From Dendrobates tinctorius (lineage: Eukaryota): a stretch of DNA of 64,000 bases. The stretch lies in assembly GCF_039654945.1 (NCBI RefSeq), contig NW_027361819.1:1922001-1986000 (forward strand). The letters run 5' to 3'. Under the pieces are notes generated by a model, which had not been told where the DNA came from, did no database searches, and saw nothing but the letters and a program-made list of their open reading frames with translations. Both the position numbers and the translations under genes were made by a program. This document shows, in pieces, positions 3,001 through 64,000 of this stretch (positions are counted from its first letter, which is position 1; the number at the start of each line of letters is the position of its first letter).

Positions 3001-3052
3001 TGTTCTCGAGCATTTGGCAGTAATGGCTGTCGGATTCTTCCTATTCTCTGTA

Positions 3053-18444: not shown

Positions 18445-18719
18445 TTTACAGTTTTGCCGTGATGCACATTTTGCAGGATTGTGGAGCCCGATCTGTTCAC
18501 ATCATTTCTATAACCACAACCACTTCCTACAGTTACTCTGGGCTGGAGGTGGTGGTGCTGAGCGGCGCACACCTACACTGCCAGGAGAATGCAGCGCCAC
18601 ACCGGCTCCTGTAACCCCTTAATTCCTGGATGATTTACACCTTCACACTGATGTCTATTACTGTCACATTCTGGTATCTGTGAATTCAGTGCAAATGATG
18701 GAGATAGATTTACACTTGA

Positions 18720-19400
18720 TGTCACCACTGCTCCTTGATCCAGAAGAGCATTTGTGGGGTCAGACCCTGATGTTTTTTTTTGTGGGGGGGTCCGGTCACT
18801 ATCTCCATTATAGGATGGGACTGAGGTCCGGGCACTGTGCGGCCGATCATGTTCTTACCTCCCCACCCCTCCATGTCTGTATGGACCTTGTGCACTGGAC
18901 ACAGTCATGGGGGACAGAGAAGGTCCATCCCCAAACTGTTCCCACAAAGCTGAAGCTACAATTGTCCACAATGTCTTCTGCTAAAGATGAAGATTTCCCA
19001 TCACTGGAGCTGAGGGTCCGAGGCCGCCCCCTGATAATGAGCCCCCAGCATTATCCCCCTCCACCATCTGTACAGGGGGCACAATGCAGTCAGGGGGGTA
19101 ACGTCCTCCTGGAATCACCAAACCCAGACTCCTCCATCAGACGCAGACACAGAAGTGCAATCCATCACCGCACAGAACACGTCTCCTCTAGGGTCCAGTG
19201 GTGGCGGCTTTACACCACTCCATCCAACACTCGGCATTGTGCTTGGTGATGTACGGCTGATCAGCCATGAAGCTCCTGGCGGGGGCGCAGTGTTTGTACT
19301 AATGCCGGATGAGGTCTGGACGCTGCAGTTAACTGGTCAACAGAGCGGTGGGGACTTTCATGCACCTGGTGATCCCGCTCATGCAATTGGTGGGTGCGAG
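18720..19400 (-). mobile_element. Highly decayed Tc1-like transposase remnant
   Basis: Resembles antisense Tc1 coding sequence (cccccagcattatccccctccacc, ccaaacccagact...ccatcaga, ctttacaccactccatccaacactcggcattg). No intact ORF; ends uncertain. Confidence 0.55.
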
Positions 19401-44049: not shown

Positions 44050-44412
44050 GGACTTGTGAATTGGTTTCAGGCTGTGAGTTAAGATATAGTGCAGATCATG
44101 TATTGAGGTTGGGTTCAGGGTTTCTAGTAATGTAATTTTCAAAACTTGGGTCGTGATCGGATTTAGTTCCTTTGTGGGATTATAAAACATATATTGGGGT
44201 TAGGTTCAAGTTTTGCATGGGAATCAATCAAGAGCATATGTTGGGTAAAGGGTTCATGACTTGTGTTAAATTTGGCTTCAAGACTCATGTTGGGGTTGGG
44301 TTGAGGACTTGTGTTGGGGTCAAATTCAGGTCTTGCCTTAGGATTGAGTCCAGGTCATGTGTTGGATTTGGATTCAGGACTTGCGTTAGGATCAGGATCA
44401 GAATGTGTTGTG
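44050..44412. repeat. Degenerate ~24-bp tandem repeat (gggttcaggacttgtgttggggtt-like)
   Basis: Recurring ttcaggacttgtgtt-like motif about every 24 bp. Confidence 0.55.
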
Positions 44413-44712
44413 TTGACTGAAGATACTGTATGTCTTGGGGTAAGTGAAAAGAGGAGGATGATTGACCTCATGGAGATCAACATCCGACACTGCGGAGACA
44501 CCATCACGTGTTTCTCAACGCAGTGATTCTAGAGCACTGCTCCCATCCCTTGTGGGAAATATGTAAAACACGCAAATATATAAGCCGCGGAGACACCATC
44601 ACATGTTTCTCAACGCAGGCAGTGACTAGCCAGGTCTTTCACCGGGAAGGAACAACCACGGGAAGGGCAGTCTCCAATGAAGGAAACCACCTATGCCAAA
44701 ACATGGTATCCA

Positions 44713-44756
44713 TCCACAGACAGCTGTTTCGGGGTATTGCCCCTCATCAGTGTGGA
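44713..44756 (-). ncRNA. Minimal type I hammerhead ribozyme, copy 1
   Basis: Minus strand reads UCCACA-CUGAUGA-GGGG-CAAUA-CCCC-GAAA-CAGCUG-UC/UGUGGA: stem I UCCACA/UGUGGA, canonical core, 4-bp stem II, short stem III with palindromic AGCU loop, GUC cleavage triplet (cut between 44719 and 44718). Confidence 0.92.
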
Positions 44757-45066
44757 GTAGGAAACTGGCTAGTGGGAGCAATGCCTAGTAACAGACCATG
44801 AAAAGAGGAGGATGATTGACCTCATGGAGATCAACATCCGACACTGCAGAGACACCATCACGTGTTTCTCAACGCAGTGATTCTAGAGCACTGCTCCCAT
44901 CCCTTGTGGGAAATATGTAAAACATGCAAATATATAAGCCGCGGAGACACCATCACATGTTTCTCAACGCAGGCAGTGACTAGCCAGGTCTTTCACCGGG
45001 AAGGAACAACCACGGGAAGGGCAGTCTCCAATGAAGGAAACCACCTATGCCAAAACATGGTATCCA

Positions 45067-45110
45067 TCCACAGACAGCTGTTTCGGGGTATTGCCCCTCA
45101 TCAGTGTGGA
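45067..45110 (-). ncRNA. Minimal type I hammerhead ribozyme, copy 2
   Basis: Identical to copy 1, 354 bp downstream. Confidence 0.92.
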
Positions 45111-45420
45111 GAAGGAAACTGGCTAGTGGGAGCAATGCCTAGTAACAGACCATGAAAAGAGGAGGATGATTGACCTCATGGAGATCAACATCCGACACTG
45201 CGGAGACACCATCACGTGTTTCTCAACGCAGTGATTCTAGAGCACTGCTCCCATCCCTTGTGGGAAATATGTAAAACATGCAAATATATAAGCCGCGGAG
45301 ACACCATCACATGTTTCTCAACGCAGGCAGTGACTAGCCAGGTCTTTCACCGGGAAGGAACAACCACGGGAAGGGCAGTCTCCAATGAAGGAAACCACCT
45401 ATGCCAAAACATGGTATCCA

Positions 45421-45464
45421 TCCACAGACAGCTGTTTCGAGGTATTGCCCCTCATCAGTGTGGA
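45421..45464 (-). ncRNA. Minimal type I hammerhead ribozyme, copy 3
   Basis: As copy 1, but the 3' strand of stem II is CCUC (one G-C becomes a G-U wobble). Core intact. Confidence 0.88.
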
Positions 45465-45765
45465 GTAGGAAACTGGCTAGTGGGAGCAATGCCTAGTAAC
45501 AGACCATGAAAAGAGGAGGATGAATGACCTCATGGAGATCAACATCCGACACTGCGGAGACACCATCACGTGTTTCTCAACACAGTGATTCTAGAGCACT
45601 GCTCCCATCCCTTATGGGAAATATGTAAAACATGCAAATATATAAGCCGCGGAGACACCATCACATGGGAGCAGTGCTCTAGAATCACTGCGTTGAGAAA
45701 CACGTGATGGTGTCTCCGCAGTGTCGGATGTTGATCTCCATGAGGTCAATCATCCTCCTCTTTTC

Positions 45766-45909
45766 TTAGACTATGAGGCCGGGCGTCTGTCCTTCTATGA
45801 GATGTGTGACCCCATCAGACACTTACACACCTTCACCTCCTCCTTCACTGAACCCCTACATGTTATCTTGTATGTGTATAAAGGAGCCTCTGTTACAATA
45901 AGAAGCTGA
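45766..45909 (+). pseudogene. 3' remnant of a different TRIM paralogue (C-terminal SPRY only)
   Basis: LDYEAGRLSFYEMCDPIRHLHTFTSSFTEPLHVILYVYKGASVTIRS* aligns to the end of the 5336-6883 TRIM but is clearly diverged. It starts abruptly at the inverted end of the 354-bp array. Confidence 0.9.
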
Positions 45910-46519
45910 GGCCGAGATTAAATGTTCATGAGTGAATTGACCCAGTTGTTTGCTTATTTTAATGGGTTACTTCCATCTCCTTAACTTCTGGTATATGGAT
46001 CGGATATACCATAACTTTTGTCATTGCTTGGACCCCACTAATCCAGAGAATGAAGGCACCACAGTCTCCCCTTTTAAGGCTTCCTAGTATGAGTATTGGT
46101 GTTTTTTTTTTTATGCTGCACCTTTTCTTTCACAAAAAGCACAGAATATTACATTAACACTTCCTGACACATGCCGTAAGTGTACATCACGATCAGGAAG
46201 GGGTTCCTCTAAATTAATGATCGGTTACATCATGGCGATCATGCAGGCACAGCTTATCTTGGCTTACGTGATAGCGGAGCTCCAGCTGTCGCACGCTATC
46301 TCCCATCCAATTGGCAGCCCCGCAACGTGATCACTTGCTGCCGATGGTAGTCATCCCAACCAGAGGTCTAATAATGACGTCTGAGTCTGCAAGTTATGGG
46401 GGCCTGTTAGACCTTGGTCCTAGAATGGTCTAACAGGTGATCTGGCAATGTCACACTGACTGGTGTAATGCATTGCAGCACATGTGCATTAGAGCAATGA
46501 TCAGAAGTTTTAAGCGCAA

Positions 46520-47180
46520 GGCCGGGGCCCGGTCCCCGAGGTTGTATGGACGCTGAATGTCCTGCAGCAGACACCGGAGGAGTAGTGAGCTGTAAATGCA
46601 CTACTCCCATCTAAGACTTGGGGGCACAACAGCAACTTGGATAGTGAGCCGGGACTCAGGAGTAGAGTCCCCGAAGCAGGCTACAGCTGTCTGCCGTACA
46701 AGTAGAGTTCTTGGGAACATCTGTCAGGAGGCACTCCAGTTTAACTCGGTACTAGGAGATCTTCACACTTAAAGGCGCTATAGAGGAGACGTTCAGAAAG
46801 GTACATGTTGGCGGAGTGTTGGAAGGGAGCATCCTATCTTGCCTGGAGGTTGACTGAGCCCAGGACCCAGAGGACACAGCACGGAGGCAGGCATCTGTGT
46901 GAACTGCAGACTGTGAGTAAAGCTTTGGAACTACATGCCCTGGTGTCCTCCACTTATTCCTGCATCACTACACCCCGCACTACTACATCTGGGCACCAGC
47001 CTCTACACCGCCTGTGCCTCTCCTCCATTGCTACATCTACACTGCCCTGGGACTACAGCTCCACCTGTGGGGAGCTTCACCATCTTGGCTGCAACCCACC
47101 ACCAGTCCCAGAGGATCTGCATGCAGCATCGGCCTAACACCTCACTTGCCGAACACCACAGGTGGCGTCACGAACTATTC
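46520..47180 (+). mobile_element. Possible decayed solo-LTR-like repeat
   Basis: GC-richer block with gactgtgagtaaag... and ...aggtggcgtcacgaac, reminiscent of anuran Gypsy LTR ends. Termini and TSD not verified. Confidence 0.3.
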
Positions 47181-50100
47181 ATAAACTTCATTTCATTGTT
47201 CATTCATCCCCTTTTTGCCAAAAACTCAATATAAATCTGGTATTGCTGTAATCGCACCCACCCGAAGAATAAAGTCGCCTAATTACTTATACCACATGAG
47301 GGACTGTGTGAAAAATAAAGAAACAAGAAAATTCTTCACCTGCTGATTTGTTCATTCTGCCTCCCAAAGATCACAGTAAAGCTTGGTGCACAATTATCCT
47401 GCACTCTGCGCTTAGCGCTTACACCAGGGTTTCTGTGTAAATCTCTGATTCAAATGGAATCCCTAGTGGAAGATTCCTTATAATGAGGCAGAGGGAGGCA
47501 CTGTGGATGTCATCTGACCTGTGATCCGGCAGTGTCAGTGTTTTTAGGTGTGTATAAAAGCATGGTCCGCCACAGTTTTGTGCACTTCTGAAAAAGACAA
47601 TGCTGAACAGAGGCCAGACGGAGTACAGAGTAATTCTGCTGCCTCATTATAGTGAATGAATCATTCTGGGGTTTCATCTGAATGTCGTCAACTCGGCAAT
47701 TCAATAATACTTTCAGTTCTGAAATTGAAGAAAAAATATAACCTTTTTTTTTTTTTTTTTAAATTTTTTAATATGTAGTTCAAGGGGGGCAATTTTGAGT
47801 TTTAGGTTTTGGTTCCCATAGGGTAGTACTCCTGCAGATGTTTGTGAAATTCTGTCCAAGAACAAACCACTGTGAATTGACAGTCCGTGGTTCTTCTGAC
47901 CTGAAAGGGAAAGCAGCTCTGCAGGCACTAAATACACCTGATTGAGAAGATCACACTGGCCTTGAATAAGAAGGAAGCAACGTGGAGAAGCTTTGATGGT
48001 CAAGATGGCCTCCGGGAGAGTAGAGTCTGAGAGGACTGCCTTTAAAGCTTAAACATGTTGAGTCGCTTCAATTGGAAGCCCACATTATTACCAAGAAAAT
48101 CGCCAGTCATTTTAAAGAAACTTAGAGAAGCAAGAGTTGTCTGAGAACCCCAGACAAGCTAGACACATCTCAGTAAAATTTTCAAGAGTTGGAAGCCAGG
48201 AGTGAGGAACTGTCTCGGGACATTTCTCGAATTAAGGACTTGGTCAACAAAAAAAGATGTCCTATTGATTTTACAAGCAAAAGATGATGTATGTAATGGA
48301 GATAAGTGTCTCCTCTATGCTATGGGTGATCTGAATGTAGGGGTGATCTCTGAGATTCTACAGAAAGGCATGGCAGAGTTTGTGACCCACGCTGAGACTT
48401 GTATCTCTCTACGTAGAGTCTTGCCAATCATTATGGATGTAAATTTGGCTCATAAAAGGATGGAGATCTCAGAAGACTTGAAAACCCATATCGGCTTCTG
48501 ATGTGAAGCATGATCGTCCGCCCTCAAGATTTAGTACTTGCACTCAAGTCTTGAGCACCTATTGCTTCACTGAGCAATGCAGCACTACTGGGAAGTCGAA
48601 ACCAGCAGCCAATGAATATGGGACGTTGGTTTGGCTTATTCTAGTATCGAAAGAGAAGGGAAATGTTATGGGATTGGAGACCATAACTGTGTCCTGGTTT
48701 TTGTAGAGATACACGATAAAGTCCCCTCTGGCCCATAACTCAAAAGCCAAGTTCCTAATTATTGAGCAGTGTTCCCCAATAATAGGCAAGTAGCTGAATT
48801 AGGAGGGTGGACTCTTGGAGTTTTATGAGCTACGTGACCAGGAGCGGCACTTGTTCTGACATCTACATACTTTCCAAGCCAATTTCCAGGAATGTTTGCA
48901 TGCAGCATTCTATGTAGACAATGGGGCTCGGATTAAGGTCCTCCTATAGAAATATTACTGTCTGTAACTTGGGGTGCACTAAATGTGTTTTACATAGTAG
49001 TGTTGATGGTTCATTGGTGTCACTGTTTGATGTTCACAATAAAAATTTCAAAGAATTCATTTCTTCTCCTTTTTCTTTTTTTTGCTTTATCTGAGTTCCC
49101 TTAGAAGCTTCAAAATGTGTTGGAGACCTCATGTCTGTTGGTTTCTCCTTTTGTCTTGGGCTCAAGATTCTTGTAGGAAGTTTCATAAGCCGGTGACCAC
49201 ATGTACACCATTTAGTAAGCAGAAACATCTCTTGTCCCAGCGATCACGTGATCGCTCGTAAGGAGCGGGGGCTTACGGGTCTTGGTAGACTCCGATCAGT
49301 ACAAAGAAGGCTAAATTTGACCTGTAACTGGGGCTAACTGGCAGCAAGCAGAGATCATGGACATCGGTAAATGTGCACAGGAACTTTTAGTTCTAGAACT
49401 TTACCAGAAGGTGTCACTGTTCGCTCACCAGGCGCTATAATGTACCCTAGCGTAATATTGTATAATGTGATGAGCTGTAAGATGTATTTTATGCTATACA
49501 CCCCTCTCAACATGGCAAGCAGGGATTACAATGGCACCCTAAATGTGATGCATCATGGTGGAAAAATAAAGAAAAATGGCAGACATTACACAGAATGGGA
49601 GGAGGAGGACATCAGAGACTCCGGGCATCCCATCCTCGTCACTCCCGGGACCTACCGCAGGCCGTGTCCTGAAGCTGAACCCCATGATAACGCTGTCTGT
49701 GGCGGTGTCCGAGAATGGGAAGATATGAGTGTCTAAGACATACATGTATTTACGGGGCTGATCTAGGGCCTGGTGGGTGGTCTTGTCTAAGGTATATTTT
49801 GAGGCTCACTTTAGAGTCTGCATTTCATTAATGGTCTGGTTATAGTTCAGGTGAGATGTATTTATGGGACATGGTTTTGGACCATTTATAAATTTGAGAC
49901 TCCCTTTATTAGGGGTTAGTCTGATCTGAGGCCTCTATGGTGGGGGATCTGGTCTTAGGCCTTTATCAGGGGGGAGGGGATCCGGCCTGAGGCTAGTATT
50001 GGGAGATCTGAGGCCTCTATTGGGGGGCAGAGTTGGTCTGGGGTCTGTACTACGGGGCTCTGATCTGAAGCCTGTTTTTCATTAGTGGGACCGTTTTGCT

Positions 50101-50460
50101 TTAGGGGGTTTGTGTTAATGGGGTCTGAGAATGGTTGGACTGGTCTCATCAGAAGAGACATTAGAGATGACGGCAGGAAGGGGTTGGTTCATTGGCCTTC
50201 CATCCGGCAGTCACCAATTACTGACTGGGAGATTGCTCAAGGGTCTCACTAATCGATTTGCTCATCTGGTCTAGTGTTTGTGTTTAATGTGGTCAGGCCT
50301 GGGGTCTTTACATATTTTATGGGGTCTAGTTACCAGTCTCTATCTTGTGGGATCGGATTTGGGGTCTGTTTTGGTTTGGTTGATGGGGTCTGCTGTGGCG
50401 TCCGATTTTGGTCTCGAGCATTTGGCAGTAATGGCTGTCGGATTCTTCCTATTCTCTATA

Positions 50461-52027
50461 CAGTGGGGAAGAAAAGTCTTTAGTCAGCCACCAATTGTGC
50501 ACGTTCTCCACTTATAAAGATGAGAGCGGCCTGTAATTGACATCATAGGTAGACCACAACTATGAGAGTCAAAATGAGAAAACAAATCCAGAAAATCACC
50601 TTGTCTGATTTGGGAAGATTTATATTGCAAATTATGGTGGAAAATAAGTATTTGGTCATTAACAAAAGTTCATCTCAATACTTTGTGATATATCCTTTGT
50701 TGGCAATGACAGAGGTCAGAGGTTTTCCATAAGTCTTCACAAGGATGGCACACACTGTTGGCGGTATGTTGGCCCATTCCTCCATGCAGATCTCCTCTTG
50801 AGCGGTGATGTTTTGGGCCTGTCGCTGGGCAACACGGACTTTCAAATCCCTGCAAAGGTTTTCTATGGGGTTGAGATCTGGAGACTGGCTAGGCCACTCC
50901 AGGACCTTCATATGCTTCTTACTAAGCCACTCCTTTGTTGCCCTGGCGGTGTGCTTGGGATCATTATCATGCTGAAAGTCCCATCTACGTTTCATCTTCA
51001 ATGCCCTTGCTGATAGGAGGTTTGCACTCAAACTCTCACGATACATGGTCCATTCATTATGTCATGTACACGGATCAGTTGTCCTGGTCCCTTTGCAAAG
51101 AAACAGCCCCAAAGCATGATGTTGCCACCCCCATGCTTCACAGTAGGTATGGTGTTCTTTGGATACAACTCAGCATTCTGTTTCCTCCAAACACGATGAG
51201 TTTTGTTTCTACCAAACAGTTCTACTTTGGTTTCATCAGACCATATGACATTCTCCCAATACTCATCTGGATAATCTAAATGCTCTCTACCAAACTTCAG
51301 ACGGGCCCGGACATGTACTGGCTTAAGCAGGGGGACACGTCTGGCACTGCAGGATCTGAGTCCCTGGTGGCGTAGTGTGTTACTGATGGTAGTCTTTGTT
51401 ACAGTGGTCCCAGCTCTATACAGGTCATTCACTAGGTCCCCCCATGTGGTTCTGGGATTTTTGCTCACCGTTCTTGTGATCATTTTGACCACACGGGGTG
51501 AGATCTTGTGTGGAGCCCCAGTTTGAGGGAGATTATCAGTGGTCTTGTATGTCTTCCATTTTCTTATAATTGCTCCCACAGTTGATTTCATCATACCAAG
51601 CTGCTTGCCTATTGCAGATTCAGTCTTCCCAGCCTGGTGCAGGGCTACAATTTTGTTTCTGGTGTCCTTCTACAGCTCTTTGGTCTTCACCATAGTGGAG
51701 TGTGACTGTTTGAGGTTGTGGACAGGTGTCTTTTATACTGATAAGTTCATTACTACAGGTAATGAGTGGAGGACAGAGGAGCCTCTTAAAGAAGAATTTA
51801 CAGGTCTGTGAGAGCCAGAAATCTTGCATGTTATTAGGTGCCCAAATACTTATTTTCCACCATAATTTGCAAAATAAATCTTGCCAAATCAGACAAGGTG
51901 ATTTTTCTAGATTTGTTTTCTCATTGTGACTCTCATAGTTGTGGTCTACCTATGAGGCCTCTCTCACCTTTTTAAGTGAGAGAACTTGCACAATTGGTGG
52001 CTGACTAAATACTTTTTTTCCCCACTA
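50461..52027 (-). mobile_element. Tc1 (DD34E) transposon, duplicate of 3053-4619
   Basis: Same inverted repeats, same early TAG and same frameshift. Confidence 0.95.
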
Positions 52028-52743
52028 TATGTGTCTGCCGGGGTGGTGGGAGGTTTCTGATTTTCTGATTTCTTTATTAGATCTGTGTCTCTGCTCATGA
52101 TTCTGTGACTTTTTCCCACAGCTCTGCTCTGAGGACAGGGATAATTTTAGCATTACTGTACATCCCATCATCTATTTTGGCCATCACCTTTTACAAGGGC
52201 CAGGAATAGCCAGTAATCCTATCCTGCTCGTTCAGTGTCTTCCCTGGCCGCTGACCAGTCAGAATTCTTGCCCCTTGTAGCGAGAAAGCTTTTCCAAACA
52301 AAAATAAAAAATACACTCCTGATAAATATCGGTCGTCCTCATCTGTCAATTAATGAAAAACTTCTTGGATGTTTGGGTGCTAACCAAAATACCAATATGG
52401 CTGGCAGTATTGATCTTACAAGTGGTGCTTGTCTCTCATTTTTCCCAGGCTTAAGATTAGTAAGTCCACCAGATTAATGCAGGTTTTCCACTCTGAAGCC
52501 ATATTGGTGGTCACCCAGTTTTTCCAAGTTCTGTTTACTGGGGTTTAGGCTCAGTAACCTTGGACTGGGAGTTTGTTGTGGGGACACTCAGGCGGCAGAT
52601 CAGGTTCACACTGAGGACTTGAAGACTCAGCCGAGTGTAATTATCAGAAGGAACAGCTGAGACGTGCAGGACGCTACAACAGCTGAAGTCTGAAGTGAAT
52701 ATTCGGCACTGTTGTCGCTGCGCTCCACTCCTTGCTGGACTCG

Positions 52744-54291
52744 ATGGCGACTGCAGATCTGAAGGACGAGCTGAACTGTTCCATATGCCTGAATATCTAC
52801 ATGGAGCCTGTAACTCTGAGATGTGGCCACAGCTTCTGCCAGGGATGTATCCGATCGGTACTGGACAGGCAAGATGGAGTTGGCATCTACACCTGCCCAG
52901 AATGCCGTGCAGAATACCAAAAGCGCCCACCATTGCGACGGAACTTGAAGCTTTGTAACATCGTGGAGCATTTCCGGTCAACGCAACCAGAGGCGAAGCC
53001 TCCCGGGATCTTCTGCACCTACTGCGTCCATGCCTCCGTCCCAGCATTCAAGACTTGCCTGATGTGCGAAGCTTCTCTGTGCAGTGTCCATCTGAGCGTT
53101 CACAGCAAATCCACCGACCACGTCTTGACAGAGCCCACCAGCTCCATGGACAACAGAAAATGTGCCACTCACCAGGAGATGCTAAAGTACTACTGCTGTA
53201 AAGATGCCGCCTGCATCTGCGTGTCATGTTGCGTGTTTGGAGAACATCGAGGACATCAGGTGGAACTTCTCAAAGAGGCATCTGAGAAGAAGAAAGAAAA
53301 ACTAAGAAAAGTTCTGGAAAAGCTGTCCTCAAAATGTGAAGAGACGGAGAAGAGCATGCAAAGTTTACAAGATCACAAGAGGGGAGTCAAGGAGAAAGCC
53401 GCAAACATGACGACATGGGTGACTGCTCTGTTTAAGGACATCAAGGCCCAGGTCCAAGCTCTGGAAGAACGGGTCTTGAGTGACATCTCCAGACAGAGGG
53501 ATAAAGTCTCGCTCTCAGTCACTGATCTGATCCAGCAACTGGAGATGAAGAAGGAGGAGTTGTCCAGGAAGATGATGTACATCGAGGAGCTGTGCCAAGT
53601 GCCCGATCCACTCGATGTCCTACAGGGACGGGACGTCAGCAGAGCTGAGCCGCCAGATGAAGGACTTGGTAAGAGGCTGCAGGCTGTAGGTGATCTTGAT
53701 GAAGTTCTGACCTCGTTGACCCTACAGTCATCTTTATCCAGTATTGTGACCAACTTAAAGCAAAACGTTAACGTCCAAAACTTAATGCTGGACATTAAGA
53801 CGGCGGCGGTTGATGTGTCTGTGTCCGGAGACCTGAAGAGCGCTACGTGGTCCAAGACCCCGATCTGGACAAAAGCTTCACAAAGATTTAAAAACTATTG
53901 TCAGGTTCTGAGTTTTCAGAGTTTTAGCTCCGGAAAGATTTACTGGGAAGTGGAGACCAGTGAACTAGGGAATTGGAGGGTGGGGGTGGCATATCCCAGC
54001 CTGGAGCGGAAGGGAGATCTGTCCGGGATAGGACAGAACAACAAATCCTGGTGCCTTCGCCTGTGTCAGAAGGATTATCTTGTCGCTCATGCTGCAAAAG
54101 AGATTCCACTACAGCTGGAGACCTCGCTGCAGAGACTAGGTATATTCCTGGACTACGAGGCTGGGCGGCTGTCCTTCTATCGGCTGTGTGAGCCCATTCA
54201 ACATCTCCACACCTTCACTGCCACCTTCACAGAGCCTCTTCATGCAGTGTTTCTGGTATGGCGGGACGGTTGGGTGAGAATCCGGAGCTAG
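52744..54291 (+). CDS. Intronless TRIM-PRY/SPRY E3 ligase, duplicate copy, 515 aa
   Basis: Intact ORF. Differs from copy A at DISK->DISR and VDVA->VDVS, plus at least one silent change. Confidence 0.95.
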   Translation: MATADLKDELNCSICLNIYMEPVTLRCGHSFCQGCIRSVLDRQDGVGIYTCPECRAEYQKRPPLRRNLKLCNIVEHFRSTQPEAKPPGIFCTYCVHASVPAFKTCLMCEASLCSVHLSVHSKSTDHVLTEPTSSMDNRKCATHQEMLKYYCCKDAACICVSCCVFGEHRGHQVELLKEASEKKKEKLRKVLEKLSSKCEETEKSMQSLQDHKRGVKEKAANMTTWVTALFKDIKAQVQALEERVLSDISRQRDKVSLSVTDLIQQLEMKKEELSRKMMYIEELCQVPDPLDVLQGRDVSRAEPPDEGLGKRLQAVGDLDEVLTSLTLQSSLSSIVTNLKQNVNVQNLMLDIKTAAVDVSVSGDLKSATWSKTPIWTKASQRFKNYCQVLSFQSFSSGKIYWEVETSELGNWRVGVAYPSLERKGDLSGIGQNNKSWCLRLCQKDYLVAHAAKEIPLQLETSLQRLGIFLDYEAGRLSFYRLCEPIQHLHTFTATFTEPLHAVFLVWRDGWVRIRS

Positions 54292-56227
54292 GATTACTAA
54301 CCTAGATGACCTGGTCCTTTAGGATGGAAGCCCTTCGAGCCTTATCCTAACTGCCAGCCTCTACGGTGCCTCTTCTGATTTGGTAGGCCTTGCGTGATGT
54401 CATGTATGCGTTGTGCCGCAACGATGACGTCACATTGGGCTTGCCAATCAGAAGACGAGTTGAGGATTGGTGCAGGTGGTAAGGTGGAGGTTTGTTGACT
54501 CCTAACTGGTGGCCACTTAGTAGTGGCTGTTGGGCCAGGGTCCAACGAATTGTTTAGCTCATGTTTATTTTCGAAAAAGATAAAAATGGGAAACGCTAAT
54601 TTTAAAGGAACTCTTCAGACAAAACTCTGGGTGGGGCACCAGACGGCATTATAATGCTCCACCACCTCAGATCAGTGTTTCGATTTTACGTTTAAGGTTT
54701 TTTTTAACAGAAAATTAGTCTAGGAAGGCTCCTCATGAGCTTTGCTAAAGTTTTCCTTTTTAAAGCGGCTTGTCAAATCCTGTTAACATAAAGGGATATT
54801 CTGATCTACACAAATGGTCACATATCTGCTGGATCAAGGTGGGTCTGAACATTGGGACTTATATTGGTCACCAGAATGGGGGATTCTCCATTCTCCCCTG
54901 ACCTCAAGACGATGGCGGGAGTTGTTGACTTGAGTGCAGGTGACTATAGATTCTGTTCATCAGTCGTGGGGCCTGAATGGAACTTCATTCAGACAAGGTC
55001 TTCCGGCCAAGGGAGATCGGCTATTGATGGGTGTCCCAATGGGTAGATCCACACCAATCTATCCAGTGGTTATTTGATCATCTTGTGTAGATCTAAAGCA
55101 TGTAATGAAAACTTCTGACACTTTTTTTTACATATTCTTACTTTCTCTGCTTGCTTTCAGTGAATGAAAACCTTTATTGTCCTCGTGTGGAACATGAATG
55201 AATGTTTCATATGTGTGACCCAAATGTATCTCGCTTGTCTGTTAAATTTGACCACTTTATGGTTTATTTTTGGATGTTACTCTCTGTATGCAGAATCCAA
55301 TCAATAAACCTTTCCTTCTGATGAATTGTGACTTTTACATTTTTGGTCTTCACTGCTGTCTCCTTCCCTGGACATATCTGGCCACCTTCTCTAGGTTTGT
55401 GGCTCCTCTACTTCTCTATGACCCTACAGCCACCTCCCCACCCTATTATACCTCTGATCCGAGGAGCCTTACACATTTTTATCCGGATGAGCCCCATTTC
55501 TCCAGGAGCCCTATAGCCGCTGCCTGTCCTGCCTCTTTAGCAAGTCAAGAGTTCCAATAAGGTGTGGGGCTTCTGAACATTTTCACTTATGGAGGCGACC
55601 ATGGACATTAATGAGGTCGGAATTAAAATATCCTGCAAATTAGGATTCTCCTGCTGGTCTGTAGAGTGATGGCGACTATATAGGTTGTCGCCCAGATTTT
55701 CCCCAAAAATTGCTGATCGTGCCTGTGAGGAGCAGGTTTTTTTTTTCTTTCTTTAGACATGTTTATTATGTGCACTCGATGGCGGCATAACCACTGGTAA
55801 GTCACAAACTACTGCAACTACGGAAAGACCTCCACCCCAAGAAACTCCCTGCAGATCATCACATCGTTGGCTCCGAGAACCTGCAGGACATTTCTCTGTC
55901 CCCTGTATAGTATAATTATGTAACACACCGCCACCATCCGCCCATAGCACATATGGATGGTGACATTACCGCAGCGCTGCAGCAGCTGACTCACATCCTG
56001 GGCTCAGCTCTTGCACAAGGCTCCCAGAGTGATGTTTCCGTTCTTAGCACAAACCTGAGAAAAAACTCAGCAGCTTCTAAATGTGCAGAAGTCAGAGCTG
56101 CATCCATTGGGGTGTCGGGGGGCCGCTGGTTCTCAAAGACCCGAAGAGATAAAGTCCTGAGGTTACAGAAACCAATGACCAGTAGGGATCAGCTGCCAAC
56201 GGTTCTTCCCCTGATGATGTCACAGTT

Positions 56228-59200
56228 CACCATATAGTGTCAATGCGACCATATACAGCCCGTGTAATACCACCATATAGTGTCAATGCAGCCATATACA
56301 GCCCGTGTAATACCACCATATAGTGTCAATGCGACCATATACAGCCCGTGTAATACCACCATATAGTGTCAATGCGACCATATACAGCCCGTGTAATACC
56401 ACCATATAGTGTCAATGCGACCATATACAGCCCCTGTAATACCACCATATAGTGTCAATGCGACCGTATACAGCCCCTGTAATACCACCATATAGTGTCA
56501 ATGCGACCATATACAGCCCCTGTAATACCACCATATAGTGTCAATGCGACCATATACAGCCCGTGTAATACCACCATATAGTGTCAATGCGACCATATAC
56601 AGCCCGTGTAATACCACCATATAGTGTCAATGCGACCATATACAGCCCGTGTAATACCACCATATAGTGTCAATGCGACCATATACAGCCCCTGTAATAC
56701 CACCATATAGTGTCAATGCGACCATATACAGCCCGTGTAATACCACCATATAGTGTCAATGCGACCATATACAGCCCGTGTAATACCACCATATAGTGTC
56801 AATGCGGCCATATACAGCCCGTGTAATACCACCATATAGTGTCAATGCGGCCATATACAGCCCGTGTAATACCACCATATAGTGTCAATGCGACAATATA
56901 CAGCCCGTGTAATACCACCATATAGTGTCAATGCGGCCATATACAGCCCCTGTAATACCACCATATAGTGTCAATGCGACCATATACAGCCCGTGTAATA
57001 CCACCATATAGTGTCAATGCGACCATATACAGCCCATGTAATACCACCATATAGTGTCAATGCGACCATATACAGCCCGTGTAATACCACCATATAGTGT
57101 CAATGCGACCATATACAGCCCGTGTAATACCACCATATAGTGTCAATGCGACCATATACAGCCCATGTAATACCACCATATAGTGTCAATGCGACCATAT
57201 ACAGCCCCTGTAATACCACCATATAGTGTCAATGCGACCATATACAGCCCGTGTAATACCACCATATAGTGTCAATGCGACCATATACAGCCCGTGTAAT
57301 ACCACCATATAGTGTCAATGCGACCATATACAGCCCCTGTAATACCACCATATAGTGTCAATGCGACCATATACAGCCCGTGTAATACCACCATATAGTG
57401 TCAATGCGACCATATACAGCCCGTGTAATACCACCATATAGTGTCAATGCGACCATATACAGCCCGTGTATTACCACCATATAGTGTCAATGCGGCCATA
57501 TACAGCCCGTGTAATACCACCATATAGTGTCAATGCGGCCATATACAGCCCCTGTAATACCACCATATAGTGTCAATGCGGCCATATACAGCCCGTGTAA
57601 TACCACCATATAGTGTCAATGCGACCATATACAGCCCCTGTAATACCACCATATAGTGTCAATGCGACCATATACAGCCCCTGTAATACCACCATATAGT
57701 GTCAATGCGACCATATACAGCCCGTGTAATACCACCATATACACTGTGTTCCAAATTATTATGCAAATGATATTTTTCTCTGATTTTCCTAAATAGTCGG
57801 TACAAATGACAGTCAGTCTAATAAAAGTCATCACCCGTTAGATTATACATCAAATTTTATTGAAGAAACCTCCCAATGATAACAGTATAATCTCCAAAAT
57901 GAATAAAAACTCAAATTTCACTGTTCCGAATTATTAGGCACAGTAGAATTTCTAAACATTTGATCTGTTTTAAAGAACTGAAAATGTTCATTTGTGGAAT
58001 TTGCAGCATTAGGAGGTCACATTCACCGAACAAAAAAGCTATTTAACTCCAAAACATCCTAACAGGGCAAGTTACGTGGTAACAGAGGAACCCTTCTGTG
58101 ATGTCACCTTCACAATTCTTGCATCCATTGAACTTGGGAGTTTTTGGAGAGTTTCTGCTTGTATTTCTTTACATGAAGTCGGAATAGCCTCCCAGAGCTG
58201 CTGTTTGATGTGAACTGCCTCCCACCCTCATAGATCTTTCGCTTGATGATACTCCAAAGGTTCTCCATAGGGTTGAGGTCAGGGGAGGATGGTGGCCACA
58301 CCATGAGTTTATCTCCTTTTATGCCCATTGCAGCCAATGACTCAGAGGTCTTCTTTGCCGCATGAAGAGGATTTTGCTCCTGAAGGCATGTTTCTGCTTT
58401 TTATACCATGGAAGACAGCGGTCAGTCAGAAACTCTATATACTTTGCAGAGGTCATTTTCACACTTTCAGGAACCTTAAAGAGCCCTACCAGCTGTTTCC
58501 CCATGATTCCGGCCCAAAACATGACTCCTCCTCCTTGCTGAAGTCGCAGCCTTGTTGGGACATAGTGGCCATCCACCAACCATCCACTACTCCATCCATC
58601 TGGACCATCCAGGGTTGCTGGACACTCATCAGTAAACAAGACTGTATGAAAATTAGTCTTCATGTATGTCTGGACCCACTGCTACAATTTCTGCTTGTGA
58701 ACACTTTTTAGGGGTGGCCGAATAGTAGATTTATGCACCACAGCAAGCCTTTGAAGGATCCTACACCTTGAGGTTCGACGGACTCCAGAGGCACCAGCAG
58801 CTTTAAATATCTGTTTGCTGGTTTGTAATGGCTTTTTAGCAGCTGCTCTCTTAATCCGATGAACTTGCCTGGCAGAAACCTTCCTCATTCTGCCTTTATC
58901 AGCACAAACATGTCTGTGCTCAGAATCAACCACAATTCTCGTAACAGTGCGATGGTCACGTTTAAGTTTTTGGGAAATATCTAATGTTTTCATCTCTTGA
59001 CCAAGGCATTGCACTATTTGATGCTTTTCAGCAGCAGAGAGATCCTTTTTCTTTCCTAAATTCCTTGAAACCTGTGCCCTGCTTAATAATGTGGAACATC
59101 ATTCTTAAGTAGCTTTCCTTTAATTGAGCTCACCTGGTAAACTAATTATCACAGGAATTTGAGATTGATTTCTGTGATCCAAAGAGCCCTGATACACAAT

Positions 59201-60547
59201 ACCATCTATGAGTTTATTTGAAAAACAAAAAATAACATCTTTATGACACTTAAATCCAATTTGCATAATAATTTGGAACGCAGTGTAGTATCAATGCGAC
59301 CATATACAGCCCGTGTAATACCACCATATAGTGTCAATGCGACCATATACAGCCCCTGTAATACCACCATATAGTGTCAATGCGACCATATACAGCCCCT
59401 GTAATACCACCATATAGTGTCAATGCGGCTATATACAGCCCGTGTAATACCACCATATAGTGTCAATGCGGCCATATACAGCCCGTGTAATACCACCATA
59501 TAGTGACAATGCGGCCATATACAGCCCGTGTAATACCACCATATAGTGTCAATGCGACCATATACAGCCCCTGTAATACCACCATATAGTGTCAATGCGA
59601 CCATATACAGCCCCTGTAATACCACCATATAGTGTCAATGCGACCATATACAGCCCCTGTAATACCACCATATAGTGTCAATGCGGCTATATACAGCCCG
59701 TGTAATACCACCATATAAAGCCCATGTAATACCACCATATAGTGTCATTGCGACCATATACAGCCCATGTAATACCACCATATAATATCAATGCAGCCAT
59801 ATACAGCCCGTGTAATACCACCATATAGTGTCAATGTGACCCTATACAGCCCGTGTATTACCACCATATAGTGTCAATGCGACCATATACAGCCCGTGTA
59901 ATACCACCATATAGTGTCAATGCGACCATATACAGCCCGTGTAATACCACCATATAGTGTCAATGCGACCATATACAGCCCCTGTAATACCACCATATAG
60001 TGTCAATGCGGCTATATACAGCCCGTGTAATACCACCATATAAAGCCCATGTAATACCACCATATAGTGTCATTGCGACCATATACAGCCCATGTAATAC
60101 CACCATATAATATCAATGCAGCCATATACAGCCCGTGTAATACCACCATATAGTGTCAATGTGACCCTATACAGCCCGTGTATTACCACCATATAGTGTC
60201 AATGCGACCATATACAGCCCGTGTAATACCACCATATAGTGTCAATGCGACCATATACAGCCCGTGTAATACCACCATATAGTGTCAATGTGACCCTATA
60301 CAGCCCGTGTATTACCACCATATAGTGTCAATGTGACCCTATACAGCCCGTGTAATACCACCATATAGTGTCAATGCGACCATATACAGCCCGTGTAATA
60401 CCACCATATAGTGTCAATGTGACCCTATATAGCCCGTGTATTACCACCATATAGTGCCTATGCGGCCATACATAGCCCGTTTAATACCACCATATGGTGT
60501 CAATGCGGCCATACATAGCCCGTGTAATACCACCATATAGTGTCAAT
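56228..60547. repeat. 43-bp minisatellite, duplicate
   Basis: Same unit; shorter than copy A to the right of the TRT insertion. Confidence 0.96.
57742..59285 (-). mobile_element. TRT-type Tc1-like transposon, duplicate
   Basis: Same TIRs, same TA site and same internal deletion as 10334-11880. Confidence 0.9.
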
Positions 60548-60879
60548 ATAATACGGCCATACTATTGTAATGTGCTGCCATATGTAGCCCGCATAATACC
60601 ACAATACAATGGCTAAGATAATATGAAATAAGATAATACTGCAATTGAAATCTAAAAAACTCACTGTATGTTACATAAGTTTTCCTGCCAGCACATCCGT
60701 AGTTGCAACAGATTCTTTGCTGCATATACTGCCCATGTGCACAGAGCCTAAGCCTCTGCTTTTCTCCTGGAGTTCTTGTCACCAGGACCCGATCTCACAG
60801 ATCACTTATGAGATTACCGAGCTCTAAAACTGAACATGAGATACACAGGAATTATAATGTAACCAATTATAAAGGTCCG

Positions 60880-63800
60880 CTGCTATAACCTGGGTGTATT
60901 ATGTATATAATTATATATGTACAGCTGCTATAACCTGGGTGTATTATGTATATAATTATATATGTACAGCTGCTATAACCTGGGTATATTATGTACATAA
61001 TGATATATGTACAGCTGCTATAACCTGGGTATATTATGTACAGTATATAATATATGTACAGCTGGTATAACCTGGGCATATCCTGTATTTAATGATATAT
61101 GTACAGCTGGTATAACCTGGGCATCTCCTGTATATAATTATATATGTACAGCTGGTATAACCTGGGCATCTCCTGTATATAATTATATATGTACAGCTGG
61201 TATAACCTGGGCATCTCCTGTATATAATTATACATGTACAGCTAGTATAACCTGGGCATCTCATGCATAAAATTATACATGTACAGCTGGTATAACCTGG
61301 GCATCTCATGTATATAATTATACATGTACAGCTGGTATAACCTGGGTATCTCCTGTATATAATTATATATGTACAGCCGGTATAACCTGGGCATCTCCTG
61401 TATATAATTATATATGTACAGCTGGTATAACCTGGGCATATCCTGTATATCCAAAATTCTAAAATAGCATGGTCGCTACCTCCTAGGGTCCCAGCCACTT
61501 TTACCTCCTCAACCATTTCCTCCCTGTTTATAAGGATTAGATCCAAGGTAGCAGTTCCCCTTGTTTTCTCCCGTACCTTTTGGAAGATAAAGTTGTCAGC
61601 AAGAGAGGATAAGAATTTCCTTGACCTGTTAGTTTTGCCTGAGAGAGATTCCCAACAAATGTCTGGATAGTTGAAATCTCCCATGACAACTATGTCATAT
61701 TTTTTGGAGAACTTGGCCATCTGATGCATAAAGAGTTCATCCATATCTTCAGCTTGCACAGGCGGCCTGTAGTAAATGCCTACAATGGTGTCCTTTCCAT
61801 TGTTCTGTCCTTGTATTCTTACCCAAACAGTTTCCACAGAACTCCCAGTCTCTGAAGCTTCAATCTCTGTGCAGATATACGCGTTTCGAACATACAATGC
61901 GACACCCCCTCCTCGTTTATCAAGTCTGTTTCTTGCAAATAAGTTGTATCCTTCTAGTCTTGTATTCCAATCATGTGTATTGTCCCACCAAGTTTCAGTG
62001 ATTCCAATTACATCATAGTTCTACATCATTATATATGTACAGCTGGTATAACCTGGGCATCTCCTGTATATAATTATATATGTACAGCTGGTATAACCTG
62101 GGCATCTCCTGCATATAATTATATATGTACAGCTGGTATAACCTGGGCATCTCCTGTATATAATTACACATGTACAGCTGGTATATCCTGGGCATCTCCT
62201 GTATATAATTACATATGTACAGCTGGTATAACCTGGGCATCTCCTGTATATAATTATATATGTACAGCTGGTATAACCTGGGCATCTCCTGCATATAATT
62301 ATATATGTATAGCCGGTATAACCTGGGCATCTCCTACATATAATTATATATGTACAGCTGGTATAACCTGGGCATCTCCTGTATATAATTATATATGTAC
62401 AGCTGGTATAACCTGGGCATCTCCTGCATATAATTATATATGTATAGCCGGTATAACCTGGGCATCTCCTACATATAATTATATATGTACAGCTGGTATA
62501 ACCTGGGCATCTCCTGTATATAATTATACATGTACAGCTGGTATAACCTGGGCATCTCATGTATATAATTATACATGTACAGCTGGTATAACCTGGGCAT
62601 CTCCTGCATATAATTATATATGTATAGCCGATATAACCTGGGCATCTCCTGCATATAATTAAATATGTACAGCCGGTATAACCTGGGCATCTCCTGCATA
62701 TAATTATATATGTATAGCTGGTATAACCTGGGCATCTCCTGCATATAATTATATATGTACAGCTGGTATAACCTGGGCATCTCCTGTATATAATTACACA
62801 TGTACAGCTGGTATAGCCTGGGCATCTCCTGTATATAATTATATATGTACAGCTGGTATAACCTGGGCATCTCCTGTATATAATTATATATGTACAGCTG
62901 GTATAACCTGGGCATCTCCTGCATATAATTATATATGTATAGCCGGTATAACCTGGGCATCTCCTGCATATAATTATATATGTATAGCCGGTATAACCTG
63001 GGCATCTCCTGCATATAATTATATATGTACAGCTGGTATAACCTGGGCATCTCCTGTATATAATTATATATGTACAGCTGGTATAACCCGGGTATCGCCT
63101 GTACATAATTATACATGTACAGCTGGTATAACCTGGGTATATTATGTACATAATGATATATGTACAGCTGTTATAACCTGGGTATATTATGTACAGTATA
63201 TAATAATATATGTACAGCTGGTATAACTAGGGCATCTCCTGTATTTAATGATCTATGTACAGCTGGTATAACCTAGGCATCTCCTATATTTAATGATATA
63301 TGTACAGTTGGTATAACCTGGGCATCTCCTGTATATAATTATATATGTACAGCTGGTATAACCTGGGCATCTCATGTATATAATTATACATGTACAGCTG
63401 GTATAACCTGGGCATCTCATGTATAAAATTATACATGTACAGCTGGTATAACCTGGGCATCTCATGTATAAAATTATACATGTACAGCTGGTATAACCTG
63501 GGCATCTCATGTATAAAATTATACATGTACAGCTGGTATAACCTGGGCATCTCATGTATATAATGATACATGTACAGCTGGTATAACCTGGCCATCTCAT
63601 GTATATAATGATACATGTACAGCTGGTATAACCAGGGCATCTCAAGTATACAACGATACATGTACAGCTGGTATAACCTGGGCATCTCCTGTATATAATG
63701 GTATATGTACAGCCGGTATAACCTGGGCATCTCCTGTATATAATTATATATGTACAGCTGGTATAACCTGGGCATCTCCTGTATATAATTATATATGTAC

Positions 63801-64000
63801 AGCCGGTATAACCCGGGCATCTCCTGTATATAATGATATATGTACAGCCGGTATAACCCGGGCATCTCCTGTATATAATTATATATGTACAGCCGGTATA
63901 ACCCGGGCATCTCCTGTATATAATTATATATGTACAGCTGGTATAACCTGGGCATCTCCTGTATATAATCATATATGTACAGCCGGTATAACCTGGGCAT
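60880..64000. repeat. 45-bp minisatellite, duplicate (runs off window)
   Basis: Same unit and same variant order as 13733-17258, with unit-number differences. Confidence 0.96.
61451..62022 (-). mobile_element. CR1 endonuclease fragment, duplicate
   Basis: Same junctions as 14349-14920; frame still open. Confidence 0.9.

What the first reader, a model, noticed from the sequence alone, without database searches (positions are those of the whole stretch)
44445..45667. Tandem 354-bp units each carrying an intact hammerhead ribozyme: a candidate frog retrozyme / circular-RNA element
Seen: three complete 354-bp units, each with minus-strand UCCACA CUGAUGA GGGG-CAAUA-CCCC GAAA CAGCUG UC^UGUGGA. The units differ by only a few substitutions, and the one change inside a ribozyme is a tolerated G-U pair. 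Established: minimal type I hammerheads with a very short stem III and palindromic loop occur in newt satellite 2, Penelope-like pLTRs and metazoan non-LTR retrozymes. They cleave as dimers and release unit-length RNAs that can circularise. Inference: a minus-strand transcript would be cut at 45427/6, 45073/2 and 44719/8, giving two 354-nt non-coding monomers that could circularise and be re-inserted as concatemers by a Penelope-type RT acting in trans. I cannot tell from the window whether this particular family is already described.
Basis: partly seen in the sequence, partly recalled or inferred. Interest (0 to 1): 0.9.

Follow-up and report, generated by a model that had tools for sequence, protein, structure and literature searches.

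The report
Frog hammerhead retrozyme, two-armed insertion
This is one young copy of a very abundant, non-coding frog repeat whose RNA carries a self-cutting hammerhead ribozyme, a kind of mobile element (retrozyme) already described in amphibians, so it is a clean but ordinary example.

Summary
There are 3.5 head-to-tail 354-bp units at 44445-45667, 98% alike.

There a 101-nt inverted copy of unit positions 173-273 is perfectly complementary to the other end (44446-44546). Both ends stop at unit position 273/274. That is the partial-tandem plus inverted 5'-truncated-arm layout typical of Penelope-like element (PLE) insertions.

The unit is non-coding, 49% GC and predicted to fold tightly as a circle (z -4.7). 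Its helix III is only 2 bp, but two copies fold best as a double hammerhead. Public runs under four organism labels hold the unit at very high depth.

There is no target-site duplication. The right edge abuts the last 47 codons of a truncated TRIM/SPRY gene, so the insertion came with a deletion or sits at a breakpoint.

Rfam models do not reach threshold, and cleavage, circles and transcription remain untested. Amphibian retrozymes, including frog ones, are published. Earlier notes of this scan report similar units (351-353 nt) elsewhere in this genome. Verdict: new member of a known kind, low interest.

The parts
44445..45765 (-). Whole insertion (about 1.32 kb). Read on the minus strand it is an inverted arm (unit 273 to 173), then direct units 114-354, 1-354, 1-354 and 1-274.
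   Evidence: BLAST of one unit against the window, unit alignment, inverted repeats
44445..45667 (-). Head-to-tail array of 3.5 units of 354 bp
   Evidence: TRF: period 354, 3.5 copies, 98%; direct repeat family D1
45421..45464 (-). Hammerhead 1 (helix II has a G.U pair); predicted cut between 45427 and 45426
45067..45110 (-). Hammerhead 2; predicted cut between 45073 and 45072. The internal loop 5' of helix I reads UUC instead of UAC.
44713..44756 (-). Hammerhead 3; predicted cut between 44719 and 44718
45073..45426 (-). Predicted 354-nt monomer RNA 1 (cut to cut)
44719..45072 (-). Predicted 354-nt monomer RNA 2 (cut to cut). The circular fold is -128.1 kcal/mol, z -4.7.
45665..45765 (+). Inverted 5'-truncated arm, equal to unit positions 173-273 in the opposite orientation
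   Evidence: 100% complementary over 101 nt to 44446-44546
44446..44546 (-). Terminal part of the long arm (unit 173-273), partner of the inverted arm
   Evidence: pair I4
45665..45667 (.). Junction of the inverted and direct arms, with 3 nt (CAT) shared by both
   Evidence: overlap of the two BLAST hits; sequence
45766..45909 (+). Flank, not part of the element: the last 47 codons and the stop of a truncated TRIM/SPRY paralogue, starting exactly at the element's edge
   Evidence: translation; 66% identity, E 2e-23 to the window's intact TRIM; tblastn; alignment

Best explanation
This is one insertion of a non-autonomous, non-coding retroelement of the metazoan non-LTR retrozyme kind (the newt 'satellite 2' type).

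Inferred life cycle: the minus strand is transcribed as a multimer. Hammerheads of neighbouring units pair through the palindrome ACAGCUGU into a double hammerhead and cut after GUC. [quoted passage not shown]

Shown by the anatomy: the DNA copy was made by reverse transcription that began at one internal site of the unit (position 273/274) from both DNA ends of a break. One cDNA ran 3.5 units. The other ran 101 nt. The two were joined at a 3-nt microhomology.

That two-armed, partial-tandem layout is the signature of Penelope-like element (PLE) reverse transcriptase/endonuclease, here acting in trans. The event removed, or bridged the loss of, most of a TRIM gene, so no target-site duplication was left.
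For: Array and motifs.

Dimer requirement: the catalytic monomer fold (-10.2 kcal/mol) is less stable than an inactive alternative (-15.4). The best fold of two copies is the double hammerhead with an 8-bp helix III (-36.3) (monomer folds). Amphibian type I hammerheads are reported to need dimers (PMC7229834; PMC4209133).

Retrozyme traits: GC is 49.2%, and the circular fold is -128.1 kcal/mol against -101.8 +/- 5.5 for shuffles. The only long ORF (97 aa) has no Pfam family and no homologue.

Abundance: in run X19 the summed depth on the unit is 1e5 to 4.5e5, against 8.9 on the unique left flank. Runs under four organism labels hold the unit. The only common variants inside the hammerhead fall in loop II.

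PLE-type insertion: both ends lie at unit 273/274, the 101-nt arms are perfect, and the internal junction has a microhomology. PLE insertions are described as partial tandems, often with an inverted 5'-truncated copy at the 5' end (PMC8557442). A purified PLE protein extends both DNA strands and starts reverse transcription inside the RNA (PMC11167929). Frog retrozymes are sister to PLE terminal repeats (bioRxiv 10.64898/2026.07.22.740005).

Youth: 7 differences in about 1,320 nt.
Against: No Rfam hammerhead model reaches its threshold.

No RNA evidence was obtained. The runs were contigs whose RNA label is a guess, and they cannot show ends, strand or circles.

In Xenopus only 1 of 9 retrozyme dimers cleaved in vitro (bioRxiv 10.64898/2026.07.22.740005).

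There is no target-site duplication and no 30-40-bp 'tail'. No PLE reverse transcriptase or GIY-YIG gene lies in the window.

Homology of the unit to a resident PLE terminal repeat could not be tested.

A circular or a linear multimeric template cannot be told apart. The 5'-most unit has 4 of the 7 differences, which is not significant.
Confidence: 0.75

Rival explanations
1. A short insert (a monomer or dimer derived from a PLE terminal repeat) landed here, and the 3.5-unit array then grew on the spot by unequal crossing-over. The hammerhead is a decaying relic that no longer cuts or makes circles.
For: Li et al. propose local amplification of PLE terminal sequences into tandem repeats, and found 8 of 9 Xenopus dimers inactive in vitro (bioRxiv 10.64898/2026.07.22.740005). 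No RNA evidence was obtained here.
Against: All three cores are intact. The only common family variants inside the motif lie in loop II. The units are as alike as the two arms made at insertion. The family is highly abundant under several organism labels, which fits ongoing mobility.
Confidence: 0.12
2. A fold-back or MITE-like DNA transposon with 101-bp terminal inverted repeats that happens to carry an internal satellite.
For: Perfect 101-nt terminal inverted repeats. Across the inverted junction the strand folds into a hairpin of -219 kcal/mol.
Against: The 'terminal repeat' is simply part of the repeated unit (positions 173-273). It is joined to the array out of register, at a 3-nt microhomology. 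There is no target-site duplication of any length. The unit carries a ribozyme typical of retroelements.
Confidence: 0.05
3. The inverted arm or the unit count is an assembly artefact in a repeat-rich, recently duplicated region.
For: PLE-type tandem/inverted structures are known to trouble assemblies (PMC8557442). The window holds a 47.4-kb duplication. A contig of run X19 leaves the window sequence at 44425, 20 nt before the array.
Against: The contig is 7.1 Mb long. The junctions are clean and base-exact, with the right flank in frame with a TRIM remnant. Inverted junctions of the same family appear in independent runs.
Confidence: 0.05

Closest known systems
Axolotl non-LTR retrozymes Rtz_353 / HHR_Amex2 and Rtz_331 / HHR_Amex1 (Cervera and de la Pena 2020, PMC7229834)
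   Same: Tandem non-coding units of about 330-350 bp. Each has one type I hammerhead with a 6-bp helix I, a 4-bp helix II and a very short helix III capped by a palindromic tetraloop (2 bp in HHR_Amex2, as here). Cleavage is efficient only as dimers. The circular RNAs are predicted to be highly self-paired. PLEs are present in the same genome.
   Different: The host is an anuran. Helix II here has no U.U mismatch. Sequence homology of the units could not be tested because no axolotl sequence was at hand. Expression and circles are shown for the axolotl but not here.
Newt satellite 2 (Epstein and Gall 1987; Forster et al. 1988, as reviewed in PMC6155905)
   Same: A roughly 330-bp dispersed tandem repeat with a type I hammerhead that acts as a double hammerhead.
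   Different: Host and sequence differ. Newt satellite 2 is reported to have its own snRNA-type promoter (cited in PMC2220036). Here there is only a perfect octamer, ATGCAAAT, in three of four units, which is a weak lead.
Xenopus non-LTR retrozyme families (Li, Clavereau and Pollet 2026, bioRxiv 10.64898/2026.07.22.740005)
   Same: Frog tandem hammerhead units, averaging 316 bp in amphibians, mostly up to seven units per array. They are related to PLE terminal repeats and proposed to be non-autonomous PLE derivatives.
   Different: None of their 18 primers matches this unit above chance, so this is a different family in a different frog. Their link to PLEs is phylogenetic. Here the link is the structure of one insertion.
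Penelope-like elements and their terminal-repeat hammerheads (PMC4209133, PMC8557442, PMC11167929)
   Same: Partial tandems, an inverted 5'-truncated copy at the 5' end, reverse transcription started inside the RNA and from both DNA strands, and a dimer-dependent hammerhead.
   Different: There is no reverse transcriptase or GIY-YIG ORF and no 30-40-bp tail. The hammerhead is the canonical form with a real, if short, helix III, not the minimal form typical of PLE terminal repeats.

Membership tests
Hammerhead ribozyme, type I (canonical metazoan form) | Conserved core: CUGANGA, GAA, A15.1-U16.1, and C17 before the cut | tested here: met
   All core positions are present in all three copies
Hammerhead ribozyme, type I (canonical metazoan form) | Helix I about 6 bp and open-ended, helix II 4 bp, helix III 1-2 bp with a small palindromic loop (PMC4209133) | tested here: met
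   UCCACA/UGUGGA; GGGG/CCCC with loop CAAUA; AC/GU with loop AGCU
Hammerhead ribozyme, type I (canonical metazoan form) | Match to the Rfam covariance model at gathering score | tested here: not met
   No hit at gathering score. Hammerhead_3 scores 16 bits against 48.5, E about 5, on two copies, and Hammerhead_1 is not listed. The likely cause is the 2-bp helix III and the open helix I.
Hammerhead ribozyme, type I (canonical metazoan form) | Loop 1 to loop 2 tertiary contacts | not tested
   An internal loop (UAC opposite U) follows helix I in the predicted circle. It was not compared with the published contact nucleotides.
Hammerhead ribozyme, type I (canonical metazoan form) | Self-cleavage after GUC | not testable with these tools
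   Needs in vitro transcription. Folding energies only show that the dimer form is favoured.
Metazoan non-LTR retrozyme | Head-to-tail non-coding units of about 170-400 bp, each with a type I hammerhead | tested here: met
   354-bp units x 3.5. The ORF has no family and no homologue.
Metazoan non-LTR retrozyme | GC below 50% and a highly self-paired predicted circular RNA | tested here: met
   GC 0.492; -128.1 kcal/mol, z -4.7, 63% of bases paired
Metazoan non-LTR retrozyme | Many dispersed genomic copies | tested here: met
   Very high summed depth in four runs under four organism labels. It is depth, not a copy count. Earlier notes of this scan report similar units on other pieces of the genome.
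Metazoan non-LTR retrozyme | Abundant linear and circular unit-length RNA | tested here: inconclusive
   No listed run is on record as RNA, and contigs cannot show ends or circles
PLE-type insertion (mobilised by a Penelope-like reverse transcriptase/endonuclease) | Partial tandem with an inverted 5'-truncated copy next to the 5' end (PMC8557442) | tested here: met
   inverted arm of unit 273 to 173; both ends at unit 273/274
PLE-type insertion (mobilised by a Penelope-like reverse transcriptase/endonuclease) | Optional 30-40-bp tail at one end | tested here: not met
   Both arms stop at the same unit position. The 7-nt extension matches at only 4 of 7 bases.
PLE-type insertion (mobilised by a Penelope-like reverse transcriptase/endonuclease) | Sequence kinship of the unit with the terminal repeat of a resident autonomous PLE | not testable with these tools
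   No PLE sequence of this genome was within reach, and there is no RT or GIY-YIG in the window
MITE / fold-back DNA transposon | Terminal inverted repeats flanked by a target-site duplication of fixed length | tested here: not met
   Inverted ends are present, but there is no duplication. The longest word shared by the flanks is 6 nt, far from the junctions, and 353 of 1000 shuffles do as well.

The most novel reading that the evidence does not exclude
Both arms start at the same internal unit position (273/274, at the end of a pyrimidine run and 81 nt before the next ribozyme cut). On this reading the position marks a specific entry site for a Penelope-like reverse transcriptase on retrozyme RNA, used from both ends of a chromosomal break. 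If most copies in the genome end there, this family would give structural, not only phylogenetic, evidence for how animal retrozymes are copied. It would show that the ribozyme-cleaved 3' end is not the priming end, and that such insertions can bridge breaks and delete genes, here a TRIM paralogue.
Probability: 0.35. Interest if true: 0.5.

Novelty: new member of a known kind. Interest (0 to 1): 0.25.

Why it matters
This copy adds little to the class. Amphibian hammerhead repeats have been known since 1987, and frog retrozymes and their tie to Penelope-like elements are published.

Its use is as a very clean, young specimen. It has three intact ribozymes, base-exact ends and an inverted arm. 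Together these record how the cDNA was made: it started inside the unit, from both DNA ends.

It also shows that such an insertion can coincide with the loss of most of a gene. A genome-wide tally of end positions in this family could turn that anecdote into a mechanistic statement.

Tried and rejected
- **Rfam.** Nothing at gathering score, and only a sub-threshold Hammerhead_3 hit in the permissive scan. The stronger microRNA-model hits at 45569-45733 come from the 101-bp inverted repeat. It folds into a -219 kcal/mol hairpin. They are not microRNA genes.
- **RNA evidence.** The one run search gave only Logan contigs with coded organisms and a guessed RNA label. The one read-laying run therefore shows presence and variants, not ends, strand or circles.
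- **More copies.** Exact-pattern scans of metagenome contigs (twice) and viral contigs found nothing. Using the 97-aa ORF as a handle found no called protein.
- **Match to tested Xenopus retrozymes.** The 18 primers of Li et al. do not match the unit above shuffled controls.
- **Duplication junction.** The DNA upstream of the window (L001) shows that copy 2 begins near 46503, about 740 nt to the right of the array, and no unit lies in L001. Rejected.
- **Target-site duplication.** None found.
- **Newt promoter paper.** Coats et al. 1994 is not held. The octamer lead rests on a citing sentence and on my own recollection.
- **Species.** One paper's flattened table places the assembly accession beside Rhinella marina. 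Its accession column is visibly out of register, so I did not use it.

Full report
**1. What is there**

Tandem Repeats Finder reports one array at 44445-45667 with period 354, 3.5 copies, 98% matches and no indels. On the minus strand each unit reads UCCACA-CUGAUGA-GGGG-CAAUA-CCCC-GAA-AC-AGCU-GU-C, followed by UGUGGA.

The 32-nt core string occurs three times, at 44719-44750, 45073-45104 and 45427-45458. The last copy has one mismatch. None is expected in shuffles. A loose hammerhead descriptor finds the same three sites and nothing else in the 64 kb, with 0.04 expected.

All core nucleotides of a hammerhead are present:
- Helix I is 6 bp and open-ended, which makes this a type I motif.
- Helix II is 4 bp.
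- Helix III is 2 bp (A15.1-U16.1 and C15.2-G16.2), capped by the palindromic tetraloop AGCU.

They delimit two full 354-nt monomers.

The units differ at 7 positions in all. One is the C to U that makes a G.U pair in helix II of the 5'-most ribozyme.

Rfam does not support the call formally. There is nothing at gathering score. In a permissive scan, Hammerhead_3 scores only 16 bits against a threshold of 48.5, on two of the three copies. I attribute this to the very short helix III and the open helix I, but it is a test that was not met.

**2.

I number the unit from the first base after the cut. On that numbering the minus-strand array is 114-354, 1-354, 1-354, 1-274.

Immediately upstream on that strand, at 45665-45765, lies an inverted copy of unit positions 173-273. 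It is 100% complementary over 101 nt to the other end of the element, 44446-44546 (pair I4). So both ends of the 1.32-kb insert stop at the same unit position, 273/274, at the end of a CCUCCUCUUUUC run.

The inverted and direct arms meet out of register (173 against 114), at three shared bases, CAT, at 45665-45667.

The hits to microRNA models are a by-product of this inverted repeat. Its strand folds into a hairpin of -219 kcal/mol.

**3. Surroundings**

*Source.* The window comes from NCBI assembly GCA_039654945.1, contig JAYMGB010000173.1. One preprint uses that assembly as the reference for the dyeing poison frog Dendrobates tinctorius (10.1101/2025.06.11.659201). Another paper's flattened table puts the accession beside a toad, but its accession column is plainly out of register.

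*Mobilising genes.* There is no reverse transcriptase or GIY-YIG gene in the window.

*Right flank.* It starts exactly at 45766 and encodes the last 47 residues and the stop codon of a TRIM/SPRY protein. It is 66% identical to the window's own intact 515-aa TRIM gene, E 2e-23. The other 468 codons of that paralogue are nowhere to the left.

*Left flank.* This is a degenerate 24-bp minisatellite.

*Target site.* There is no target-site duplication.

*Interpretation.* The insert therefore sits at a breakpoint. Both ends of the insert lie at the same unit position, so both are original insertion ends, not later deletion scars. I infer that the deletion, or the joining of two distant DNA ends, happened in the insertion event itself.

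I fetched the DNA upstream of the window through the TRIM gene as L001. It shows that the second copy starts near 46503, about 740 nt to the right of the array, and that L001 holds no retrozyme unit.

**4. How it most likely works**

*Shown by folding.* For a single 44-nt ribozyme, the catalytic fold (-10.2 kcal/mol) is less stable than an inactive alternative (-15.4). For two copies, the minimum-energy structure is the double hammerhead. ACAGCUGU of one copy pairs with that of the other into an 8-bp helix III, at -36.3 kcal/mol (monomer folds also).

This matches the published behaviour of amphibian type I hammerheads. They cut poorly as monomers and well as dimers (PMC7229834; PMC4209133; PMC6155905).

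The 354-nt monomer folded as a circle gives -128.1 kcal/mol, against -101.8 +/- 5.5 for dinucleotide shuffles (z -4.7). Helix I forms in that fold and 63% of bases are paired. GC is 49.2%. Both values fit the description of retrozyme circles (PMC7761336).

The only long ORF is 97 aa, on the opposite strand of each unit. It has no Pfam family and no homologue among 5.8 billion proteins.

*Inferred, not shown.* Minus-strand multimers are transcribed and cut co-transcriptionally through double hammerheads. The 354-nt products are then circularised by a host ligase.

*Shown by anatomy.* The DNA copy was made from two cDNAs that both began at unit 273/274, one from each DNA end, and that were joined at a microhomology.

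This is what is described for Penelope-like elements. Their insertions are partial tandems, often with an inverted 5'-truncated copy at the 5' end, giving inverted repeats around the whole unit (PMC8557442). A purified PLE protein cuts and extends both DNA strands and starts reverse transcription inside the RNA, at a site not homologous to the target (PMC11167929).

In frogs, retrozyme families are sister to PLE terminal repeats (bioRxiv 10.64898/2026.07.22.740005). So a PLE enzyme acting in trans is the best-supported driver.

The start site lies 81 nt before the next cut, so the template was not a linear monomer primed at its ribozyme-made 3' end. It was either a multimeric transcript or a circle copied round and round. 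The seven unit differences do not decide between these. The 5'-most unit has four of the seven, which by my own Poisson estimate is about 0.04 before correcting for choosing the most divergent unit.

**5. Abundance and conservation**

The single run search returned only assembled contigs with coded organisms. Their RNA label is a guess.

Laid on 44300-45900, runs under four organism labels all hold the unit. In the largest run (X19) the summed depth on the unit is 1e5 to 4.5e5, against 8.9 on the unique left flank. The tool warns that this is not a copy number, so I take it only as 'very many copies'.

I converted the listed common variants to unit positions by hand. They fall at about 31 positions, of which one (unit 337, a base change and a one-base insertion) lies in the 44-nt ribozyme, in loop II. 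About 4 would be expected if variants were spread evenly, which by my estimate has a probability near 0.1. This is consistent with constraint on the ribozyme but does not prove it.

Contigs with inverted junctions of this family occur in two other runs. One of them sits at the same unit position, 173/174 (table 5).

**6. Comparison with what is known**

The kind is established:
- Newt satellite 2.
- The axolotl families Rtz_331 and Rtz_353, with circles shown in tissues (PMC7229834).
- About 9,000 minimal hammerheads in Xenopus tropicalis (PMC4209133).
- 57 Xenopus retrozyme families, with retrozymes found in all seven amphibians sampled (bioRxiv 10.64898/2026.07.22.740005).

The closest in form is the axolotl Rtz_353 / HHR_Amex2. 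It has a unit of about 350 bp and a helix III of 2 bp with a tetraloop.

The unit does not match the primers of the nine Xenopus elements tested by Li et al.. It is therefore another family, in another frog.

Earlier notes of this scan describe similar units of 351-353 nt, and a two-armed copy, on other pieces of this genome. Those are unchecked AI notes. What I tested here is the structure of my own copy.

**7. Verdict**

Novelty is low: this is a new member of a known kind. The most interesting residue is mechanistic, namely a shared internal start site on both arms and an insertion that coincides with the loss of a gene.

Noticed in passing
window 1-13142 and 47417-60547; L001:3647-4700: A 47.4-kb duplication at 98% identity. 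The upstream DNA shows that the second copy starts near window 46503. A roughly 700-bp piece (46503-47220) occurs once more at L001:1-583.
   Followed up: partly
window 5336-6883 and 52744-54291: Two intact single-exon TRIM genes (RING, B-box, coiled coil, PRY/SPRY; 515 aa) that differ by two residues, one in each copy of the duplication.
   Followed up: partly
window 45766-45909: A remnant of a third, older TRIM/SPRY paralogue: the last 47 codons and the stop, 66% identical to the intact gene. It is cut off exactly at the edge of the retrozyme. In the runs labelled 'RNA?' (X1, X3, X17), depth on 45758-45865 was in the same range as on the unit. In X19 it was more than 100 times lower than on the unit.
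   Followed up: yes
window 44924-44931, 45278-45285, 45632-45639: A perfect octamer, ATGCAAAT, beside a TATA-like run in three of the four units. It is lost in the fourth by the A to G change at unit 148. Newt satellite 2 is said to have an snRNA-type promoter. However, a large subfamily in run X19 reads ATGCAAAA here, so this is only a weak lead.
   Followed up: partly
window 45501-45772: Transcription across the inverted junction would give a perfect 101-bp hairpin (-219 kcal/mol), a possible source of small RNAs. It explains the spurious microRNA-model hits.
   Followed up: partly
window 44545 joined to 45571 (run X1) and 44790 joined to 45475 (run X17): Contigs from other runs carry inverted junctions of the same family. 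One sits at the same unit position (173/174) as the end of the inverted arm here, so that breakpoint may recur.
   Followed up: no
window 44300-44425: An 837-nt contig of run X19 at single-copy depth matches the left flank with two differences. It then leaves the window sequence at 44425, 20 nt before the array, and does not resume on the right flank. It could be an allele, a paralogue or a relative without this insertion.
   Followed up: no
window 8820-10333, 11881-13400, 56228-57741, 59286-60547, 60853-64000: Long arrays of 43-bp and 45-bp tandem repeats. Repeat arrays of this kind likely account for some of the long mechanical ORFs at 14871-19249 and 61034-64000.
   Followed up: no
window 3620-4186 and 13887-14795: Fragments of a Tc1/mariner transposase (HTH_Tnp_Tc3_2) and of a LINE endonuclease (Exo_endo_phos_2).
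   Followed up: no
window 44508-44801, 44862-45155, 45216-45509: A 97-aa ORF on the plus strand of each unit (the unit length, 354, is a multiple of three). It has no Pfam family and no homologue, so it is most likely chance.
   Followed up: yes
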